From: Ranitomeya imitator
Taxonomy: Eukaryota
Assembly: GCF_032444005.1 (NCBI RefSeq)
Contig: NC_091282.1
Location: 554,404,001 to 554,468,000 of the forward strand
Length of the DNA: 64,000 nucleotides
Reading direction: 5' to 3'
Position 1 is the stretch's first letter. Every line of letters begins with the position of its first letter. This document shows positions 1-58,688 of the stretch, piece by piece. The notes beneath the pieces were generated by a model. It ran no database searches and had not been told where the DNA came from. It saw only the letters and a list, made by a program, of their open reading frames with translations. The position numbers and the translations under genes were made by a program.

Positions 1-548
1 ATGTTATTAGTAACTATCAGGTCACTTTGTGTGCTCTTAACCACCAGGTCCATTGTGTTCTGAATCACCAGTTCATAACACATGTCCATGATTTTTCATG
101 CAAGTCAACGAGTCAGTGAAAAAGTCGGACCTCACTGTTAGGGCTCATAATCACTTGCAAGAAACTTGAATGATTCTCGCACGTCAATTCCCGACACTGT
201 ACCCGGCACTCAGGAGCGGAGCATGCGGCTGCATGTATTCCTATGCGGCTGCACGCTCCGATCTGAGTGCCGGCAGCAGCGCCGGTTATTAGGCTGCCAT
301 CACACTATCAGTATTTGGATCCAAGAAGTATTGTTTCTCCTTGCGGAGAGTGACATGATAAGCATGTCGAGGTGAGGAGACTTAAAGCCGCAATGCTCCT
401 CTGGGAAATATGCAAATTGTCTCTTCAGAGAGGAAGAGGACTAAAACCCTAGTGCCACCTATTGGAAGTAGCAATCCTAACAGTCAATGTCAACCCTTTA
501 ATGAGACTTGTCACATGACTTAGGATAATAGCCAAACCAGAATCTCAA

Positions 549-593
549 TTTGCAGACACTGTGTTTCGGGGTACTGCCCCTCGTCAGTGCAAA
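549..593 (-). ncRNA. Type I hammerhead ribozyme
   Basis: Minus strand reads UUUGCA-CUGACGA-GGGG(CAGUA)CCCC-GAA-ACA(CAG)UGU-C/UGCAAA. All core nucleotides are present, stems I-III pair, and the cleavage triplet is GUC (cut between 555 and 554). Stem I is extended by a perfect 12-bp helix (530-541 with 601-612). Confidence 0.9.
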
Positions 594-891
594 GTGGAGA
601 TCTGGTTTGGCTGATTGAGAGGCGTCTGACCGGGATCCAAGAAGTATCGTTTCTCCTTGTGGAGAGTGACATGATAAGCATGTCGAGGTAAGGATTGCTA
701 CTTCCAATAGGTGGCACTAGAGTTTTAGTCCTCTTCGTCTCTGAAGAGACAATTTGCATATTTCCCAGAAGAGCATTGTGGCTTTAAGTCTCCTCACCTC
801 GACATGCTTATCATGTCACTCTCCGCAAGGAGAAACGATACTTCTTGGATCCCGGTCAGACGCCTCTCAATCAACCAAACCAGATCTCCAC

Positions 892-929
892 TTTGCACTG
901 ACAAGTACCCGAAACACAGTGTCTGCAAA
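892..929 (+). pseudogene. Degenerate hammerhead ribozyme copy (stem II deleted)
   Basis: tttgca-ctgacaagtaccc-gaaacacagtgtc-tgcaaa: stems I and III are retained, but the GA-GGGG arm of the core/stem II is missing. Confidence 0.8.
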
Positions 930-3629
930 TTGAGATTCTGGTTTGGCTATTATCCTAAGTCATGTGACAAGGCTCATTAAAGGGTCGACATTGACTGTTA
1001 GGATTGCTACTTCCAATAGGTAGCACTAGAGTTTTAGTCCTCTTCCTCTCTGAAGAGACAATTTGCATATCAGTATTTGGTCAGTATTTTACAACAGTAT
1101 TTGTAAGCCAAAACCAGGAGTGGAACAATTAGAGGAAAAGTATAATAGAAACATATGCACCACTTCTGCATTTATCACCCACTCCTGGTTTTGGCTTACA
1201 AATACTGATGTAAAATACTGACCAAATACTGCTAGTGTGACGGCAGCCTTAACATGCGAGACTCATCCGAGTTTCTCACATGTGAGTATGAGCCCATAGG
1301 ACTAGCTTCCACTTGCAATGAAATGAGATGAATTCAATTTGAAAAAAAAAATCAGATTGCATTCGGACTAATGTTTTTCAATGGTTTAATGCTCATCTAC
1401 AATTTCTTTATCAGCTTGGATTGGATTGCAATCAGACTTATAAAAAATTGCAGCATGCTGCAAGTGGATGCGAATCTCTGATGACAAGCATCAATAGAAG
1501 TTAATGGGTGCGAGAAAAAAATTGCAAGGCACTCGGACCATGCATATGTAATTTTTCCATGCATATACTTGAAAAGTTGACATTTCATCAGCCATGTACA
1601 GTAAAATCACAGCATGACAAGTCATAATAGAAGAGATAGAGTAGATATAAACATTGACTAGACAGATAGATAGAAAGATAGATAGAAAGATGTCAGTCAC
1701 ATATATAAGCAGTCCAGTACATGTGCAGCTTACTGTGCATGTATTTAGTTAATAAATACATTTCTGAAAAAAATTGCGTGGGAGCCCCCAAAATTTTAGA
1801 GGGAAAGCTGGGGGCTGGTGTCTATAGCCTGGGAAGGGAGTAATACACATGGAGCTCCCCAAACTATTAATATCAGCTCACAGCTGTATACTTAGCTTTT
1901 ACTGGTTACTAAAATGGGGGACCCCAAAAAGAAAATGACGTAGGGTCTTTTTATAATTAATAACTAGCAAAGGCAAAACAGACAGCTGCGGGCAGATATT
2001 AATAGCTAAGGAAGGGGCTATGGATGTTGCCCCTCCAGACAGGCAGCTCCAGCACACGGCCTCAATACAGACAAGCACACAGAGCAAAACATTTTTTCAA
2101 TATGGCCATCTGAACCTGGCCTCGGTCTGTGCAAAATGGGCAGCATCTGAACAATAACTTCAAACATGCCCAGCCAAAGATGCATAAAAAGAGTGCTAGA
2201 TTAGAAAAAATTAATCAAACCAAAGAAAAGAGAAACCAATACAATAACAATGAGTGCATGTACGTATGTATATAAAGTATATTTATTTGAAATCACAAAT
2301 CAATACGTGTGTGAGTGTATGTACAATGCACTCTAATATAAGCCTTCAAGTCCAGACTCTGCTACATAAATGTGTGCAAAGGTGAAAATAATATACAGTG
2401 AATATATTAGATACTGTATACTATAGTCACGGCGAGGTCAAAAGTATGGTTTAATTGAGATTATTAAAGTAGTCTGTGTCATTTTTTCAATTACCCCCGG
2501 CAGCCATTTTCCCGGAGTCCACCGCACAGTAAACCATGTACCGAAAGTGCGGGGCTCTGAGCTTTCACAAAATGTCGGCAGAGCCCCCCGCACCACCGAA
2601 CAACCGCTGCTGCGCACATCGTAACACCCCCTCATCCCGGCCTGCAGCAACGCTCCACTCTTGCCTCCTCCAGCAGTGACCCTGGGACCCCGCTTTACTG
2701 CAGCCACCACCCCCGGTAAGCAATAAGACACATGGATTAGAAGAAGCACCACCATTTTATTAAAAAATAGTTTTTTTTCCTATTTTGCTCCTCAAATCAA
2801 ATTTTGGGGTGCTTCTTATAATCAGCAAAATACGGTATGTGTGTGTCACTGACATCTATACATCTATGTATTCTATGTGTATATATCTATTCTATCTACT
2901 CTATTCTAACCTGTCAGTGTGATATTACTGTATGCGGCACAAGAATTGCTGGCTTTTCAAAGTATCTAGAGGTATGGTTCTACAGCAAGTAGTTTTTTTC
3001 TCTGGAGGCATTCAACTTTATTAGCATGCACAAAGAGACACAAGTTAGCCCCAAATGCACATGAAAAAAACGCAAATAAAAATGCACTAAGGGTAAAATC
3101 ACACAGGGCGTTTTTGCTGTGTTTTTTTAATGCTAATTTTCCGCTGCTATTTACAGTACCAGCAAAGCCTACGAGATTTCAGAAATCTCATGCACACACA
3201 TTGTTTTTTTGGGTGATCAGTATTTTGTGCTTTGCAGCATTTTTTGGACATAGATCATGTCACTTCTTTCAGCGTTTTCAACCCATTGACTTGAATGGAT
3301 GGTGAAAAAGCACAGCAAATACGCAGGTTGACTTTTCTTGCAGCGTATTTGCTGCAGAAAAGTCAAGGACAGCCGGATGGGACGTAGGCTCTGCTACATC
3401 TAGACGGCAGGCTGAATGATGAGTCAATGCAGCAGTCATCCAACATTACAGTGTTTGATACCCTGTCATATGCATGACAGCGCGGCAAACACAGCTTCTG
3501 ATCGGCAGGGAAATCATCCCCGCCGGTCAGAGAGCCGCGGTTCCCATGCTGTCAGAAGACAGTAGGGAGGGTCAGCTGTGATCGGAGGTATAAACTTTAC
3601 CTCTGGTCAATGGTGTCAGCTAATAGGAC

Positions 3630-12590: not shown

Positions 12591-12747
12591 TAAGTTCCAT
12601 TACAATCAGTTTTAATGCTGACCATCTGTGCCTGCTCGACTTGTGCTGCAGGTGTATAACGTTAAATCATATGATGTGTGAACACTGCACTCCTTCATGC
12701 ACTGTTTAGTCTTACTATATTTGTTCCTTTTTTTTTTTTTTTTGCAG

Positions 12748-13642
12748 AAATGGAAGAGTGTTTATGAATCCAAGTCTTTACATACCATCCTTAACGTCCA
12801 TGATGTGATGGACAATGCAGATCCCTTTGATGCCAAGAAAGATGATGAAGATTTGCATGACGTTCTAGAGTTCGTGCTGTCCATGGGTGATGGCAAGAGT
12901 GACCAGATCTGTGGAGATTATTCCCTGACTACTGCTGACGTATGCTCTTATTACCAAACAACCCCTTCTCCAGGGGGCTACAACGCAGATCACAGCCCAC
13001 CACCTTATAGTTCATCTAGTCTTGTGACTGAGTTTATGCGACCTGCCATGGACACCTACTGTCAAGCAAACAGAATTCCAGGGAGGGTTTTTGTGAGTCA
13101 AAACTTTGATTTTCCAGACACCATTAAAACCGAACCACCAATGGACTCATATGGACCTATAATGGGCTTGGTACCTCAGTCCTGTCCCAAAATCAAGCAG
13201 GAAGGTAGCGCTGCTTGCATGATGGCATATGACCAGCCAAGACTGGCAAACTCTCCTCAGATGGGAGGCAGTGACATTCCACCACAGACCCCAGATGACT
13301 TGCTGATGAATAACTGTCCAACACAATTAATGTGCCATCCAGCAATGCCATACAGCCATGGTTACCATAATGCAGCAGCTTTCCATCATCCACCTTCCAA
13401 CCAGTATCACGGAACGTCACAATTTGGCATGTTTGAGGACAGTTTGTCTATGCAGTTGTCTGCTGCTAGAGGGGTCACAACTCCTCCATGTTCTCCTTTG
13501 GAAATTCTGGATTCCAAACCAAAGAGGGGACGAAGATCATGGCCCAGAAAGCGAACAGCTACACATACCTGCTCATATGCTGGCTGTGGAAAGACGTACA
13601 CCAAAAGCTCTCATCTCAAGGCTCATCTAAGGACCCATACTG
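12748..13642 (+). CDS. KLF2: Kruppel-like factor 2, exon 2 (activation region, basic NLS, zinc finger 1)
   Basis: Polypyrimidine tract plus CAG acceptor at 12747. Encodes [15 protein letters not shown] and [43 protein letters not shown]. Donor GTAGGT at 13643, phase 1. Confidence 0.96.
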
Positions 13643-13869
13643 GTAGGTAGTAATTTATATTGCCACTAATGTTGTCCTGTCCTAGATCCACTGGGCCATT
13701 GATTGTTTTTAAAAATGTAAAATATATATATATATATATATATCTCTCATTATATGTTTAGTTTGGGAATCCCATAGAAATTGTTATTAATCAGGTCAGG
13801 CCAAATGTTTATGTCCATTTACATCTGGTTAGCTGCATGATTGATGGTTGGGGATTAGAAACTAATTAA

Positions 13870-28359: not shown

Positions 28360-30190
28360 AAGCGCCGTGATTACGGACCGTGGACATGCACCCTAAGAGT
28401 GCAGCCATTCAAAATGGAAACAATAAAAGCATCAATAAAAATGTAGTTTCCACTTTGTTTCATGGCAATGTTAGATCTAAAGGACGCATATTATCACGTC
28501 CCCATCCACAGAGGTAATCAAAGATTCCTCAGGATAGCAGTCCGAATCAAGGGGGCAGCACGGTGGCGCAGTGGTTAGCACAGCAGCCTTGCAGCGCTGG
28601 AATCCTGGGTTCAAACCCCACCAAGGACAACATCTGCAAAGAGTTTGTATGTTCTCTCCGTGTTTGTGTGGGTTTCCTCCGGGTACTCTGGTTTCCTCCC
28701 ACATCCCGAAGACATACTGATAGGGAATTTAGATTGTGAGCCCCAACGGGGACAGTGATGATAACGGGTGCAACCTGTAAAGCGCTGCGGAATATGTTAG
28801 CGCTATATAAAAATAAAGATTATTATTATTAAGGGGGTGATAAAACATTACCAATTTGCAGCCCTCCCCTTTGGGCTGGATATAGCACCTCGAGTATTCA
28901 CCAAACTGGTGGCAGAGGTTATGGCCCACCTGAGGGAACAAGACACTCTAATCGTGCCATATCTAGATGTCTTCCTGGTGGTCGGCAACTCCCCCCAGCA
29001 TTGTGAAGCTCAGTTAGAGAAGATCATGCACTCCTTAAAAAACTTGGGCTTGCTTGTGAACCTGACAAAGTCCAAATTAGTACCAAGCCAGGTACAGGAA
29101 TATCTGGGCATCACATTAGATTCTGTCCAGCAGGAATGCCGTCTACCCTTGGGAAAAATTCAAAAGATGGTGGGGTTAGTGTCTAGAGCGAGGGATCTCC
29201 CCTCCATATCCTTACGAGATGCAATGTCCCTCCTGGGGTCCATGACAGCATGCATCCCCGCGGTTCAATGGGCTCAGCTACACACGAGGGATCTCCAATG
29301 TCAGATTTTGTCAGAAGGTCGGTTCAGTTTATCACCAAACACAGCTCTCTCTCTAGAGTGGTGGATGAAGACAAGCAATCTGACCAGAGGTGTCCCATGG
29401 GTAGTCCCGATCTCAAAAGTGGTGACTATAGACGCAAGCCCCAATGGTTGGGGGGCCCATCTGAATGATCTCATAGCACAGGGGGTCTGGTCAGAAGACC
29501 TGAAGGGAGCGTCTTCCAATATGAAAGAGCTACTTGCAGTAAAATTTGCACTCTTAAGATTCCTAAATTATCTTCACTCCCATCATATCAGAGTATTATC
29601 AGACAACCGAGCAGTGGTAGCCTACTTAAATCACCAAGGGGGTACCGATCCCAGTCACTAATGAAGGTAACAAAATCAATCTTCCATCTAGCCGAGAGCA
29701 ACCTAGGGTCCTTGACGGGCCTTCACATAAGAGGGGTGGATAATTACAGGGCAGACTTTCTGAGTCGGTCCCACCTGAGAAAGGGAGAATGGGAATTGAA
29801 CCAATCTATATTTAATCAAATCTCAGAAAGATGGGGAACATCAGACATAGATCTATTTGCGAACAATCTGAACGGGAAGGTGGATAACTTCTGCTCTATC
29901 ACACCATTAGGGAACCCGTCACATTAGATGCATTCCTAATTCCATGGAACTATCGGCTAGCATATGCATTTCCCCCAATCGCACTAATACCAAAAGTCCT
30001 GAGGAAAATATGGGAAGACAGAGCTCGTGTAGTCTTGATCGCCACCTTCTGGCCAAAGAGGATTTGGTTCTCTTGGATGAGGATGATGTCCGTCTCCGAC
30101 CCTTGGGTGCTCCAGGATCTTCAAAATCTCCTCTCCCAGGGACCAGTAGCGCACCCACAGGTAGCAAATTTACACTTAACTGCCTGGAAT
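28360..30190 (+). pseudogene. DIRS RT-RNaseH-methyltransferase-like ORF (stops, frameshifts, SINE insertion)
   Basis: Motifs LDLKDAYYHVPIH, YQFAALPFGL, YLDVFL, YLGITLD, TIDASPNGWGA, NMKELLAV, SDNRAVVAYLNHQGG, IDLFA and YAFPP. Confidence 0.92.
28556..28830 (+). mobile_element. tRNA-derived V-SINE-like element
   Basis: A box tggcgcagtgg, B box ggttcaaaccc, central gggtttcctccgggtactctggtttcctccca (V-domain-like), (TAT)n tail, 7-bp TSD AAGGGGG (28549-28555, 28831-28837). Removing it restores the reading frame RIKGVIKHYQF. Confidence 0.88.
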
Positions 30191-36750: not shown

Positions 36751-38870
36751 TTAAGTTACGTGCCAACGTTGAAAAAATGGAAGCAGAAATTTCTGCACCA
36801 TTTCTGCATCGCTTGGCAGGAAAATGCGCTTTTTTAATGCATTTTTTCTTGCTTTTTTTACTTATTTGACTGAAAAAAACAGAATTAACATGCTGCAGAT
36901 TATTTTCTGCATGAAATCTGCAAGTCACAAATAAGCAACGTGTGCATAACACTTCAGGTTTCTCATTCACTTTGCTGGCATCAGCAAGTCTAGCAAATCT
37001 GCATGGTAAAACCGCACCAAATCTGCAACATGTGCACAAGCCCTTATAGCGCCGACATCCACTTTTGATCGCACCAGCGCTCTGAGTGAGCCCGCACGAT
37101 TGTCACGCCGTATATGTACTTCAGATGTCTTGAAGGGATTCTCTAGTGAAAACGACTTATCACCTATCCATGGATTTATCAATCTGTCGGAACCTGATTT
37201 ATCCTAAAGGGGATAAAAGGGCTTTGTTGGGTATAAAAAAACGGCCCCGTTCTGCTGATTGGACCTCCAATTGCCCCTTATGAGTGACATCATTTTTCGT
37301 TTTTTTGTTGTCACTACAATGTACTACTATTTGAACCTCTCTGGCACCAAGTGTGTTAATGTGCTGTAACCACATCATTTTACTATCTTTTAAAATAGCT
37401 CCTTTCGAGAGATGCATAGTAGTGCTGGTTACTGAAATGGAAGAACGCATCTCTCATTTCACTTTTATGAAGGTTCATATGTTCAGCAATCAGGTACGGA
37501 CTGAGGCTGAATTTCAGCCCTGGCATTTGAAATCAACACAGGCTCATTTTGTCCCCGTTCCCAAGCACCAGATGGGGATATATTAGTAATATTACCCTGG
37601 ATGGAGGAAAGGAAGATTTATTACAAGACCAATATTTCTAATGATACCTCCTTCACAACTCTTAACAGTATGGGTGTCTTGAGAACACCGATTCTGATAA
37701 CAATGTAGCAGACAAGGCAGCCCACGACCAAACAGGCCCTTCTGGCATTTGCCAGAATTGCCAGATAACCAGTCCGGCCCTGTCAGCAATAGCAGAAGAC
37801 AAAGTATTGCTAGATTCCAATGTACAGTAGATGGGTGAGCAGTTTTGGTGTAAAAGTATATCCTTATTTATTTTTAAACTGGGGTAAAAAGTAACCAAAT
37901 GTATGACTAGAGACCTGTTTTTTAATTTTCTAGTTAAATTGCATTTTCTAGAACGCCTCATCAGGGTTTGGTCATTTTTCACCATCAGCAATTTTTCACT
38001 GGTGAAAAAAAAAAGTCAAAACTTCTATTTATTGCAATGTTAATCATGGACAGCACACCGACTGCACACGGATGCCATTCGTGTGAGATTTGTGAATTTC
38101 ACAGACCCATAGACATCTATGGACAATTTTGAACTGTGACTGTGGATGTCTCTGTGATTTTTCAAAGAAACCACAGACACCTCCTAAACTATAATGAGTA
38201 CATGTTCTATCCGTGAAAAACATGAATAGAACATGTAATGAAAAACGAGCTTGTGAATGAGGCCTAAGGGTACTTGCTCACAGAGTTCTTTTGAGTAGGT
38301 AAAAAAACAACAAGTCTTCAAGTAGAAACCACTCCAGGAATTGCTTTTCTTTTGGAAAAAAGACGCAGTGTGAACATACCCCAAGGACAGGTTTAGACCA
38401 GTGTTATTTCACAGCCTGCATATAGCCCGGAAAGCTGGGTCTCCTGATCGGAGCTTAACAGCCTCATATGTGTCTATGAGGTTCTATGTTCAAGTCGGGA
38501 GACCCACGATTAGCTCAAGCATTGCGGTCCATACACGAACCATAAAACTCGCTTGACTGAACCTGGCAGAACAGTGAAAAAAAGAGGGTTTGTGTGCGAT
38601 AATCCATTTCAATTGCTTTTGGTGCACACCTCAATGTTGTTTCACGTCAACTAAAGCCAAGATGCCTGTTCCTTAATGGCTTGTTCACAATTCAGGGACT
38701 TTAGATGCAGTTTTACAATCCAAAGCAAAGAGTGGGTTCATAAAAAGCAGAAGTCTGCATCTTATCTTAACAGGTGTCTTCCATTTACAGTACGAGCTAT
38801 TCCTGGCTTTGGCCTCAAAAGCTGCAGCAAAAAACCTTAAGATGGAAACCTCCTTACTCATATGTGATAA

Positions 38871-40642: not shown

Positions 40643-42337
40643 TTAGCAGTCCATGGATGTATGGTACAGTCCAAAGCATTCTTTCATACACAGACCAGGT
40701 TTGTCGGGGCAGGTGTCACATAGATAAGTGGTGTCCTTGCGTATACTCCTTCTGTAACACACTCGGCAGCTCTTTTGCGACCTTCTTTTTTTTGGGCTTT
40801 GAGAGACCTCCCCAGGAAATGTTGCCATGGTACGATACAAGAACCCTCAGTTCCGGATGTACTGGGACCTGCTACTTCCTGACCTCCATAGATAGGGCCT
40901 TGATAACTACCTCCTGAAACTAAAGGTATGACATACCGATCATGATAGCACAAAAGCGTGCACGGCCAGCTTCTTGTACCACACCTTGGCCATTCTCATG
41001 GCACTGTTCGGCTCCAGGGCTTGTTGCTGAAGTGATCAATGACCTGATGAACTTTGAAAAGACTGTCAAAGTTGAGGTCACCTCGAGGAGGACATGCATT
41101 ATCATTATAATGCAAAACTTTTGGATGGCATCAAAATGTTTACGGGTCATGGCCATTCGGAACACTGGTGTGTTATACAAAACATCAACACTCCAATATT
41201 GCTGAAGTTCTTGCTTCTTCAGTAGACCCCTGTGAATAACCAGACTCCAAAACGTCATAATTTCTTCTGCGTTTCCACGAGTCCAGTTAGAAAATGATGA
41301 CAAGCTGTTTTGTGACAAAAATTGTTGGGGGTACAAATTTGTTTGGCCCATCATGAGATTTACAAATTCCTCAGAGAAAAAGACTTTAAAAAAGTCTATT
41401 TCTGTGAGGCCAGTGGTGCCAGATCTGATTCCTGACAAAATCAGGAATCAGTGGCTCATAATCTGAGGTCCACAGGAGGTCAGAAACAGTGGGCGGTGGT
41501 TCAGTTTCTGTCTTGGGGCATCTACGTGGCAGTTTGGTATCGCTGGAAGAGGTTGAGAAGAAAAAATGACAGAAGGCGGGATCTTCTCCCTCACTTTCAG
41601 TGTTGGAGGCAAGGAAAGCGTATGCCTCTTCCACTGAATACTGGGGTTTGGAACGAGTGGGACTTTTTTTTTTATGTATGTGATGTTTATTGAGTACCAA
41701 ACTTTATTCGTGTGTGAGTGTATGTGAGTGCCTGGTGTAAGTTTTTATCCATTTTTGCAAAGAAAAAAAGCAGTAACCGGAGGCTGGTCAGCGATGTGTG
41801 TACGATTGACGCAGGGATGTGGAAAACAGCAAGCACGAGTGAAGTTCAGCGACTTGAGCCACTGATCAACGCTCAGTGGCTACTGCATGCACACACGGAG
41901 GTGGTGCAAAATGGAGGGGAGGGGGAAACATGGACAGAGACTAAACAAAAAGTCCTGGAAACCAGTGAGCACAGACATTGATTTGCGTCACTGATCAGCG
42001 CTCGGCAGCAGAGGGGGGGAATGGAGAGAGGGGGATTGGAGTGGATGAGGAGAGAAAAGGGATCAGGAACTTTTCTTTCTTCAGCAGGAGTGGCGATGAT
42101 CAGACAGCAGTAGGATCTGTAATGTCACAGGCTTCTGTGGCACCGCAGAGCCAGACTTCTGTGTGCAACCCCCTCCCTCCTTCCCCCCGGGATGACAACT
42201 TCATGTGCACAGCTCCAAGAAGGCCCCAAATTTTAATGCTCACGGTGCCACATTAAAGATGAGACGTATTCATACATCCCAGGTCAATAAGGCCCAGGTT
42301 ACAGGAACGTATGGATACGTCTCGGGTGGGAAAGGGG
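40643..42337 (-). mobile_element. Internally deleted piggyBac transposon remnant
   Basis: N-terminus YSVEEAYAFLAS, DFFKVFFSEEFVNLM..QTNLY and WYKKLAVH, plus the C-terminal Cys-rich domain CRVC..CDTCPDKPGLCMKECFGLYH. Putative 5' TIR ends aaagggg-tcaa at 42337. Confidence 0.85.
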
Positions 42338-58486: not shown

Positions 58487-58688
58487 NNNNNNNNNNNNNN
58501 NNNNNNNNNNNNNNNNNNNNNNNNNNNNNNNNNNNNNNNNNNNNNNNNNNNNNNNNNNNNNNNNNNNNNNNNNNNNNNNNNNNNNNNNNNNNNNNNNNNN
58601 NNNNNNNNNNNNNNNNNNNNNNNNNNNNNNNNNNNNNNNNNNNNNNNNNNNNNNNNNNNNNNNNNNNNNNNNNNNNNNNNNNNNNNNN
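58487..58688. other. Assembly gap (~200 N)
   Basis: Run of N. Confidence 0.99.

What the first reader, a model, noticed from the sequence alone, without database searches (positions are those of the whole stretch)
530..612. Intact type I hammerhead ribozyme with an extended stem I in a 316-bp repeat unit
Seen: the minus strand has the complete hammerhead core (CUGACGA...GAAA...GUC), a 4-bp G-C stem II with a CAGUA loop, a minimal 3-bp stem III, and a 6-bp stem I. After a small internal loop, stem I continues as a ~16-bp helix with 12 perfect bp. Known: minimal type I hammerheads with very short stem III occur in Penelope-like elements, newt satellite 2 and metazoan non-LTR retrozymes, which self-cleave tandem transcripts into monomers or circular RNAs. 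Inference: this is a mobile self-cleaving RNA family, possibly uncharacterised in this lineage, and 316-nt monomers or circles could exist.
Basis: partly seen in the sequence, partly recalled or inferred. Interest (0 to 1): 0.85.

Follow-up and report, generated by a model that had tools for sequence, protein, structure and literature searches.

The report
Frog hammerhead retrozyme insertion, Penelope-style
The reported self-cutting hammerhead RNA motif is real and complete, but it sits in one dead-end insertion of a small non-coding jumping element (a "retrozyme") of a kind already described in amphibians, so it is a clean example rather than a discovery.

Summary
Minus strand 612-530 carries a complete type I hammerhead: core CUGACGA/GAAA/GUC, 4-bp stem II, 3-bp stem III, and a 6-bp stem I extended by a 16-bp helix. 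Predicted cleavage is at 555|554. Rfam Hammerhead_1 matches end to end at 25.5 bits, below the gathering score of 34. None of 1000 shuffles gave a motif of this quality.

The motif lies in a 749-bp non-coding insertion (319-1067). A 13-bp target-site duplication flanks it, and removing it restores a palindromic MITE. The insertion is two head-to-head arms of a 316-nt unit, each about 1.2 units long, with 2-3 nt microhomology at both outer ends and 7 nt at the centre. This is the partial-tandem plus inverted signature of Penelope-like elements. The second arm's hammerhead is broken.

Public contigs show a high-copy family in at least three organisms. The hammerhead block shows no listed variant, unlike the rest of the unit.

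This is a non-LTR retrozyme, a class documented in amphibians. This locus has only one intact ribozyme and cannot release 316-nt monomers or circles. I found no evidence of expression or circles. Earlier notes of this scan report the same family elsewhere in this genome.

The parts
530..612 (-). Complete type I hammerhead domain: stem I extension, internal loop 1, 6-bp stem I, core, stem II, stem III
   Evidence: (I8). No listed variant row falls within 530-613 in four public runs.
549..593 (-). Full-length match to Rfam Hammerhead_1 (RF00163), 25.5 bits against a gathering score of 34
555..587 (-). Catalytic core from CUGACGA to GUC; predicted self-cleavage between 555 and 554
319..694 (-). 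Arm 1: 1.17 units of the 316-nt repeat in hammerhead sense. Its 5' end is at the centre and its 3' end abuts the left TSD, sharing 2 nt of microhomology (317-318) with it.
   Evidence: (D2, spacing 316)
688..1067 (+). Arm 2: 1.2 units in hammerhead sense on the plus strand (period 309 because of a 7-nt deletion). Its 3' end abuts the right TSD, sharing 3 nt of microhomology (1068-1070) with it.
   Evidence: (D1, spacing 309)
875..946 (+). Broken hammerhead of arm 2. The core G8 position reads A (903, a CpG-to-CpA change) and 7 nt of stem II are missing. Few family contigs match here.
   Evidence: In one search the depth falls to 8,028 in bin 866-902, against 582,623 over the intact copy (bin 533-569).
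688..694 (.). Central head-to-head junction of the two arms, with 7 nt (GTAAGGA) shared by both
   Evidence: (I1 and I3 overlap)
306..318 (+). Target-site duplication, left copy (TATCAGTATTTGG)
1068..1080 (+). Target-site duplication, right copy (TATCAGTATTTGG)
291..1249 (.). Host palindromic MITE split by the insertion. Removing 319-1080 restores 71-bp arms at 96% complementarity.
   Evidence: (I4, I6). In one search, 224 DNA contigs carry MITE terminal sequence directly before 1070.

Best explanation
This is one insertion of a non-autonomous, non-coding hammerhead retroelement: an amphibian-type non-LTR retrozyme, derived from and most likely mobilised by Penelope-like elements.

Shown by the sequence:
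- A 749-bp insert lies between 13-bp target-site duplications inside a MITE.
- It consists of two arms of a 316-nt unit placed head-to-head. Each arm runs in hammerhead sense from the centre outward and is longer than one unit.
- Each arm starts at the flank with 2-3 nt of target/template microhomology. The arms are joined at the centre through 7 shared nt.

Inferred:
- Both 3'-OH ends of a 13-bp staggered break primed reverse transcription at internal sites of a hammerhead-sense RNA. The two cDNAs were then joined.
- Both arms read straight across the GUC|U cleavage site and exceed one unit. The template was therefore an uncleaved multimer or a religated circle, not a cleaved linear monomer.

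The ribozyme:
- It has a complete core and the canonical loop 1/loop 2 layout, but a 3-bp stem III that is not stable alone.
- As in newt and axolotl elements, it probably cleaves efficiently only when two copies pair their near-palindromic stem III strands.
- In multi-unit master copies this would cut transcripts into 316-nt monomers that a host ligase could circularise.
- This locus, with one intact ribozyme, is a dead end.
For: Motif:
- Core and stems are present.
- Rfam RF00163 matches full length at 25.5 bits.
- 0 of 1000 shuffles reach the observed stem lengths.
- The hammerhead-consistent fold is -34.3 against an MFE of -38.2 kcal/mol.

Dimer:
- The stem III segment alone has dG 0.
- Two copies form an 8-bp duplex around an A.A mismatch at -8.4 kcal/mol.
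- Amphibian hammerheads with a short helix III cleave well only as dimers (PMC7229834).

Insertion:
- The TSD TATCAGTATTTGG is at 306-318 and 1068-1080. The rebuilt empty site is a MITE with 71-bp arms at 96%.
- 224 DNA contigs carry the MITE end directly before 1070.

Architecture:
- Within-arm periods are 316 and 309. The arms differ at 10 of 279 aligned sites, 8 of them outside the broken stem II.
- Partial tandems plus an adjacent inverted 5'-truncated copy are characteristic of Penelope-like elements (PMC8557442).
- A purified Penelope-like element protein cuts and extends both DNA strands and starts reverse transcription internally (PMC11167929).

Class features (from PMC7229834 and 10.64898/2026.07.22.740005):
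- The unit has 46% GC and 63% paired bases, with a circular fold z of -3.5.
- No ORF exceeds 79 aa.
- The TSD is longer than 4 bp.

Family:
- About 73,000 contigs of one DNA run lie on the 1.1-kb stretch laid (unit plus host MITE).
- Runs of three coded organisms hold the unit.
- 16 variant rows with a majority share in another organism fall in the other 293 nt of arm 1, and none in 530-613. The chance of that is about 0.02 if sites were uniform.
Against: - The Rfam score is below the curated gathering threshold, and no cleavage assay exists.
- In a Xenopus test, 8 of 9 predicted retrozyme dimers did not cleave in vitro (10.64898/2026.07.22.740005).
- No covariation could be measured. The hammerhead block shows no listed variation, the variant table is truncated (149 rows hidden), and individual copies could not be retrieved.
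- No autonomous Penelope-like element was found among the window's ORFs of 150 aa or more. The mobilising enzyme is therefore inferred from architecture and literature only.
- In runs guessed to be RNA, the ratio of unit depth to MITE depth (0.08-0.14) equals that in DNA (0.10). There is no sign of specific accumulation.
- Neither the arm ends nor the central junction coincide with the cleavage site, so ribozyme cutting left no trace in this insertion.
Confidence: 0.85

Rival explanations
1. It is a heavily 5'-truncated copy of an autonomous Penelope-like element (only pseudo-LTR sequence), not a separate non-autonomous retrozyme family.
For: The hammerhead type and the tandem-plus-inverted layout are the same as in Penelope-like elements (PMC8557442). 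A preprint places retrozymes as sister to pseudo-LTRs (10.64898/2026.07.22.740005). Earlier scan notes (unchecked) list many such elements in this genome.
Against: Both arms cross a unit boundary with a period of 316 nt (309 after the deletion). The template therefore repeated every 316 nt, not every roughly 3 kb as a full element would. The insert holds no ORF fragment with RT or GIY-YIG similarity (longest ORF 79 aa). Contigs in all four runs show head-to-tail joints of the unit (673 to 406).
Confidence: 0.1
2. It is a SINE-like element copied by a LINE (L1 or CR1/L2 type) with twin priming. The hammerhead is incidental.
For: A 13-bp TSD and an inverted 5' segment joined through microhomology also occur in LINE-1 twin priming (general knowledge). 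PMC7229834 leaves LINEs open as possible mobilisers.
Against: Neither end has a poly(A) or a microsatellite tail. Both priming sites are internal to the unit, with 2-3 nt microhomology. Internal initiation and extension of both strands are documented for a Penelope-like element and were contrasted there with R2 and L1 (PMC11167929).
Confidence: 0.04
3. The hammerhead-like motif is a chance or decayed look-alike with no catalytic ability, and the repeat spreads independently of it.
For: The Rfam score is below gathering. The MFE fold pairs part of the core with the stem III loop. 8 of 9 Xenopus retrozyme dimers were inactive in vitro (10.64898/2026.07.22.740005). Penelope-like clades without hammerheads still proliferate (PMC8557442).
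Against: All invariant core positions and the three stems are present. 0 of 1000 shuffles match. The block shows no listed variant across three organisms while its surroundings do. The sister arm shows what decay looks like.
Confidence: 0.1

Closest known systems
Amphibian non-LTR retrozymes (axolotl Rtz_331/Rtz_353; newt satellite 2; Xenopus families)
   Same: Non-coding unit of about 316-350 nt. Type I hammerhead with canonical stems I and II and a short helix III that points to dimeric action. GC below 50%. TSD longer than 4 bp. High copy number. Head-to-tail repeats (PMC7229834; 10.64898/2026.07.22.740005).
   Different: Stem III here is 3 bp with a triloop and a near-palindrome (ACAC-A-GUGU). 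Amex1 has 1 bp plus a palindromic tetraloop and Amex2 has 2 bp plus a tetraloop. This locus holds only about 1.2 units per arm with one intact ribozyme, not a multi-unit array. No circRNA or cleavage data exist for this family. No paper in the searched library links hammerheads to Dendrobatidae.
Penelope-like elements (Penelope/Poseidon, Neptune) and their pseudo-LTR hammerheads
   Same: The insertion layout is the same: partial tandem plus an adjacent inverted 5'-truncated copy inside one TSD. Reverse transcription starts internally, on both DNA strands. The hammerhead lies in the sense strand (PMC8557442, PMC11167929).
   Different: There is no RT-GIY-YIG ORF. The repeat period is 316 nt. 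The hammerhead has the canonical loop 1/loop 2 layout, rather than the 'atypical minimal' variant reported for Penelope-like elements (PMC7229834).
Schistosoma Sm-alpha hammerhead (type I reference structure)
   Same: Recalled from memory, not tested here: a 6-bp stem I followed by a 3-nt bulge (CAC here), and a 4-bp stem II capped by a 5-6 nt loop beginning CA. This is the geometry that allows the loop-loop contact.
   Different: The Schistosoma ribozyme has a longer, stable stem III and works as a single motif. The repeat unit sequences are unrelated.
LINE-1 twin priming
   Same: Both ends of a staggered break prime cDNA on one RNA. This gives an inverted 5' segment joined through microhomology.
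   Different: There is no poly(A) priming. Both initiations are internal, and the template is longer than one unit.

Membership tests
Hammerhead ribozyme type I (Rfam RF00163) | Conserved core C3-U4-G5-A6-N7-G8-A9, G12-A13-A14, A15.1-U16.1 and H17, with stem I open-ended | tested here: met
   CUGACGA / GAAA / GUC with G10.1-C11.1 at minus strand 587-555.
Hammerhead ribozyme type I (Rfam RF00163) | Score at or above Rfam's gathering threshold (34 bits) | tested here: not met
   25.5 bits, E = 7.9e-5 in a 73-nt scan, with full model coverage 1-45. Not reported in the whole-window or 1.1-kb scans. The short stem III costs score.
Hammerhead ribozyme type I (Rfam RF00163) | Three helices around the core | tested here: met
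   Stem I is 6 bp plus a 16-bp extension, stem II is 4 bp, stem III is 3 bp. 0 of 1000 shuffles match.
Hammerhead ribozyme type I (Rfam RF00163) | Mg2+-dependent self-cleavage 3' of H17 | not testable with these tools
   Needs in vitro transcription of monomer and dimer constructs.
Non-LTR retrozyme (Cervera & de la Pena 2020) | Short (about 170-400 nt) non-coding unit of low GC carrying a type I hammerhead | tested here: met
   316 nt, 46% GC, longest ORF 79 aa.
Non-LTR retrozyme (Cervera & de la Pena 2020) | Head-to-tail tandem copies, each with a hammerhead (the 'active' definition of Li et al. 2026) | tested here: inconclusive
   Each arm crosses a unit boundary (periods 316 and 309) but holds only one hammerhead site, and one of the two is broken. 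Contigs in four runs show tandem joints elsewhere in the family.
Non-LTR retrozyme (Cervera & de la Pena 2020) | Retrotransposition marks: TSD longer than 4 bp; no LTR, PBS or PPT | tested here: met
   13-bp TSD and a restored MITE empty site.
Non-LTR retrozyme (Cervera & de la Pena 2020) | Expression as linear and circular monomer RNAs | tested here: inconclusive
   Contigs of runs guessed to be RNA hold the unit, but at the same ratio to a neighbouring MITE as in DNA. Contigs cannot show ends or circles.
Non-LTR retrozyme (Cervera & de la Pena 2020) | Co-occurrence with autonomous Penelope-like elements in the genome | not tested
   Known only from unchecked notes of this scan. None was seen among the window's ORFs of 150 aa or more.
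Penelope-like element (autonomous) | ORF encoding RT plus GIY-YIG endonuclease | tested here: not met
   The 749-bp insert has no ORF above 79 aa. The window's only RT hit is a Ty3-type RT/RNase H.
Penelope-like element (autonomous) | Partial tandem plus inverted 5'-truncated copy within one insertion | tested here: met
   Head-to-head arms at 319-694 (-) and 688-1067 (+) inside one TSD. The feature is described in PMC8557442.

The most novel reading that the evidence does not exclude
The insertion is a preserved footprint of reverse transcription primed on both DNA strands of one staggered break, copying a circular (or uncleaved multimeric) retrozyme RNA. Both cDNAs exceed one unit and read through the ribozyme cleavage site. 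Together with a hammerhead block that shows no listed variant across at least three related frog species, this would mean poison frogs carry a live retrozyme-circRNA system. It would also mean the both-strand extension seen in vitro for a lizard Penelope-like element operates in vivo on retrozyme templates.
Probability: 0.3. Interest if true: 0.45.

Novelty: new member of a known kind. Interest (0 to 1): 0.25.

Why it matters
This finding adds no new kind of system. Its value is as a well-resolved example. The empty site, the 13-bp TSD, the microhomologies at both ends and at the central junction, and arms longer than one unit together fix the geometry of the integration event. They fit the both-strand, internally initiated reverse transcription reported in vitro for a Penelope-like element.

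It also shows that hammerhead retrozymes are abundant in this frog lineage, for which the searched literature reports none.

There is a practical lesson too. Rfam scans at window scale miss these short-stem-III hammerheads, so motif descriptors are needed to count them.

Tried and rejected
- Rfam at gathering threshold on the whole window gave no hit. Rfam in 'evalue' mode on 200-1300 gave only spurious sub-threshold miRNA and sRNA hits caused by the inverted repeats.
- Tandem Repeats Finder did not report the 316-nt repeat, because only about 1.2 copies are present.
- blastn of the insert against the window found no further copies.
- A structural hammerhead descriptor over both strands found no second intact motif. 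The pattern hits at 1536-1591 and 37905-37964 lack the stems.
- An exact-pattern scan of metagenome contigs for the family's hammerhead gave 0 hits.
- The search for RNA runs found no run on record as RNA. All holders are stored as contigs, so read starts at 555|554, strand and circles could not be examined. Depth ratios gave no sign of specific expression.
- A literature search for hammerhead plus Dendrobatidae found 0 papers. The anuran TE paper that was read mentions Penelope but neither hammerheads nor retrozymes. The search table shows no 'Penelope' occurrence in either poison-frog genome paper; neither was checked for hammerheads or retrozymes.
- A chance motif was rejected.
- A DNA-level satellite duplication was rejected because of the TSD and the clean empty site.

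Full report
**1. The observation**

Read on the minus strand, 612-530 contains a complete type I hammerhead.
- The segment reads, 5' to 3': stem I extension, internal loop, UUUGCA, CUGACGA, GGGG-CAGUA-CCCC, GAAA, CAC-A-GUG, UC, then UGCAAA and the returning strand of the extension.
- The pattern CTGANGA...GAAA...GTC matches at 587-555.
- My own descriptor scan of both strands found this as the only motif with stems I/II/III of 6/4/3 bp.
- None of 1000 dinucleotide-preserving shuffles of the window produced a motif with those stem lengths. A loose descriptor (4/3/2 bp) hit 18 of 300 shuffles.
- The inverted repeat 530-554 / 588-612 (I8) and the fold confirm the extension. It is a 16-bp helix (12 perfect bp, one bulged U, 4 bp) beyond a CAC/UU internal loop.
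- The 91-nt segment folds at -38.2 kcal/mol (z = -6.1). The hammerhead-consistent secondary structure lies 3.9 kcal/mol above that MFE. That is usual, because tertiary contacts are not modelled.

**2. The Rfam result**

- The gathering-threshold scan of the window gave nothing.
- A permissive scan of 200-1300 gave only sub-threshold miRNA-like hits caused by inverted repeats.
- Only a 73-nt slice returned Hammerhead_1 (RF00163). It covered the full model (1-45 of 45) at 25.5 bits, below the curated 34.
- The model aligns stem III as 4 bp with a 1-nt loop, which cannot form. Physically it is 3 bp (ACA/UGU) with a CAG triloop.
- So the motif meets every sequence and structure criterion of the family, but not the database's score cut-off.

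**3. Anatomy of the locus**

- The hammerhead is not in a long tandem array. The plus strand carries TATCAGTATTTGG at 306-318 and again at 1068-1080.
- Deleting 319-1080 rebuilds a palindromic MITE with 71-bp arms at 96% complementarity (I4 and I6).
- In a DNA run, 224 contigs carry the MITE's terminal sequence directly before 1070. These are uninterrupted MITE copies.
- The 749-bp insert has two arms:
  - Arm 1 is minus strand 694 to 319. It spans 1.17 units with a within-arm repeat spacing of 316 and carries the intact hammerhead.
  - Arm 2 is plus strand 688 to 1067. It spans 1.2 units with a spacing of 309.
- Both arms run in hammerhead sense from the centre outward. Their 3' ends therefore touch the TSDs and their 5' ends meet in the middle.
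- The left end shares GG (317-318) between unit and target. The right end shares TAT (1068-1070). The central junction shares GTAAGGA (688-694).
- In unit coordinates counted from the cleavage site, arm 1 spans 178 through 316/1 to 236, and arm 2 spans 74 through 316/1 to 147. No end coincides with the cleavage site.
- Arm 2's hammerhead is broken. The G8 position reads A (a CpG-to-CpA change at 903) and 7 nt of stem II are missing. This explains the 309 spacing.
- Few family contigs match that stretch. Depth is 8,028, against 582,623 over the intact copy.
- Outside that lesion the arms differ at 8 of about 277 sites, several of them at CpG.

**4. Mechanism**

- Shown: the geometry above.
- Inferred: the two 3'-OH ends of a break staggered by 13 bp each annealed through 2-3 nt to an internal site of a hammerhead-sense RNA. 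Each primed cDNA synthesis, and the two cDNAs were joined through a 7-nt microhomology.
- It also matches the in vitro behaviour of a lizard Poseidon element. That protein cleaves and extends both strands and starts reverse transcription internally, and HHR cleavage was not required for its in vitro insertion (PMC11167929).
- Each arm exceeds one unit with a 316-nt period and reads across GUC|U. The template was therefore a multimer or a circle of the 316-nt unit. It was neither a full Penelope-like element nor a cleaved linear monomer.
- No poly(A) or LINE-type tail is present.

**5. The ribozyme's likely mode of action**

- The stem III segment alone is unstructured (dG 0). Two copies form an 8-bp duplex around an A.A mismatch at -8.4 kcal/mol.
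- Amphibian hammerheads with a short helix III cleave weakly as single motifs and efficiently as dimers. Their 330-350-nt monomers accumulate as linear and circular RNAs, probably closed by a tRNA ligase (PMC7229834).
- By analogy, multi-unit copies of this family would be processed into 316-nt monomers.
- The unit has the stated class features: 46% GC and 63% paired bases, with a circular-fold z of -3.5, and no ORF above 79 aa.
- This locus has a single cleavage site on that strand. It could be cut once at most and cannot release a monomer or circle.
- Caveat: 8 of 9 predicted Xenopus retrozyme dimers failed to cleave in vitro (10.64898/2026.07.22.740005).

**6. The family beyond this locus**

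- Runs of several coded organisms hold 31-66% of the sampled words of the stretch searched: the 754-nt insert, one 316-nt unit.
- I laid four contig sets on 200-1300 at 80% likeness or more. 73,334 contigs of one DNA run fit the stretch, which also includes the host MITE.
- Head-to-tail joints of the unit (673 to 406) appear in all four runs.
- Within arm 1, the listed variant rows with a majority share in another organism fall at 16 positions outside 530-613 and at none inside. The nearest are 529 and 614/615.
- With uniform placement the chance of that gap is about 0.02. This is soft evidence, because 149 rows were not shown.
- It means the hammerhead block of this copy shows no listed departure from the family contigs of the three organisms, while the rest of the unit does.
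- No covariation can be read from an unvarying block, and individual copies could not be retrieved.
- Expression is unresolved. No run is on record as RNA, and all are stored as contigs.
- The unit/MITE depth ratio is 0.10 in DNA and 0.08-0.14 in the runs guessed to be RNA. There is no sign of preferential accumulation.

**7. Comparison with what is known**

- The class is established:
  - newt satellite 2 and axolotl retrozymes (PMC7229834);
  - retrozymes in all seven amphibian genomes sampled, with a mean unit length of 316 bp, and a sister relationship to the pseudo-LTRs of Penelope-like elements (10.64898/2026.07.22.740005).
- Earlier notes of this scan (unchecked leads) call this genome a poison frog. 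They report the same roughly 314-316-nt family with the same inverted layout in other windows, plus many autonomous Penelope-like elements. I verified only what lies in this window.
- No paper in the searched library links hammerheads with Dendrobatidae.
- The finding is therefore a new member of a known kind. The "extended stem I" is the normal closing helix beyond loop 1 of natural type I hammerheads.

**8. Verdict**

- The interest is modest. It rests on the unusually legible integration footprint.

Noticed in passing
window 291-318 and 1068-1249: Palindromic MITE of about 197 bp (71-bp arms, 96%) that hosts the insertion. It is extremely abundant in public contigs (summed depth up to 6.8 million in one DNA run). 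It gives spurious sub-threshold hits to the plant MIR2630 model (59.7 bits against 144).
   Followed up: partly
window 141-187 and 1249-1295; joints 285/288/290 to 1249/1255: DNA contigs skip the entire MITE, so the MITE is itself nested in an older repeat with 47-nt inverted arms at 81%. That makes three layers of nesting.
   Followed up: no
window 186-290: GC-rich imperfect hairpin (arms 186-213 / 263-290, 75%). The overlapping stretch 200-283 gives a sub-threshold mir-1451-like hit (30 bits against 85). Contig depth there is high in all runs, so it is probably part of another repeat.
   Followed up: no
window 28837-29661 (+): ORF fragment with RVT_1 and RT_RNaseH domains. This is an LTR-retrotransposon (Ty3-type) remnant, not a Penelope-like element.
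   Followed up: no
window 40920-41438 (-): ORF fragment with a DDE_Tnp_1_7 (piggyBac-type transposase) domain.
   Followed up: no
window 12697-13650 (+): 317-aa ORF ending in a C2H2 zinc finger (score exactly at the Pfam threshold).
   Followed up: no
window 58487-58688: Run of 202 N (assembly gap or mask), left untouched.
   Followed up: no
window 535-607 compared with the whole window: Method note: Infernal's speed filters drop this short-stem-III hammerhead in 1.1-kb and 64-kb scans. It appears only in a 73-nt slice. Rfam-based counts of such ribozymes in this genome will therefore be too low.
   Followed up: yes
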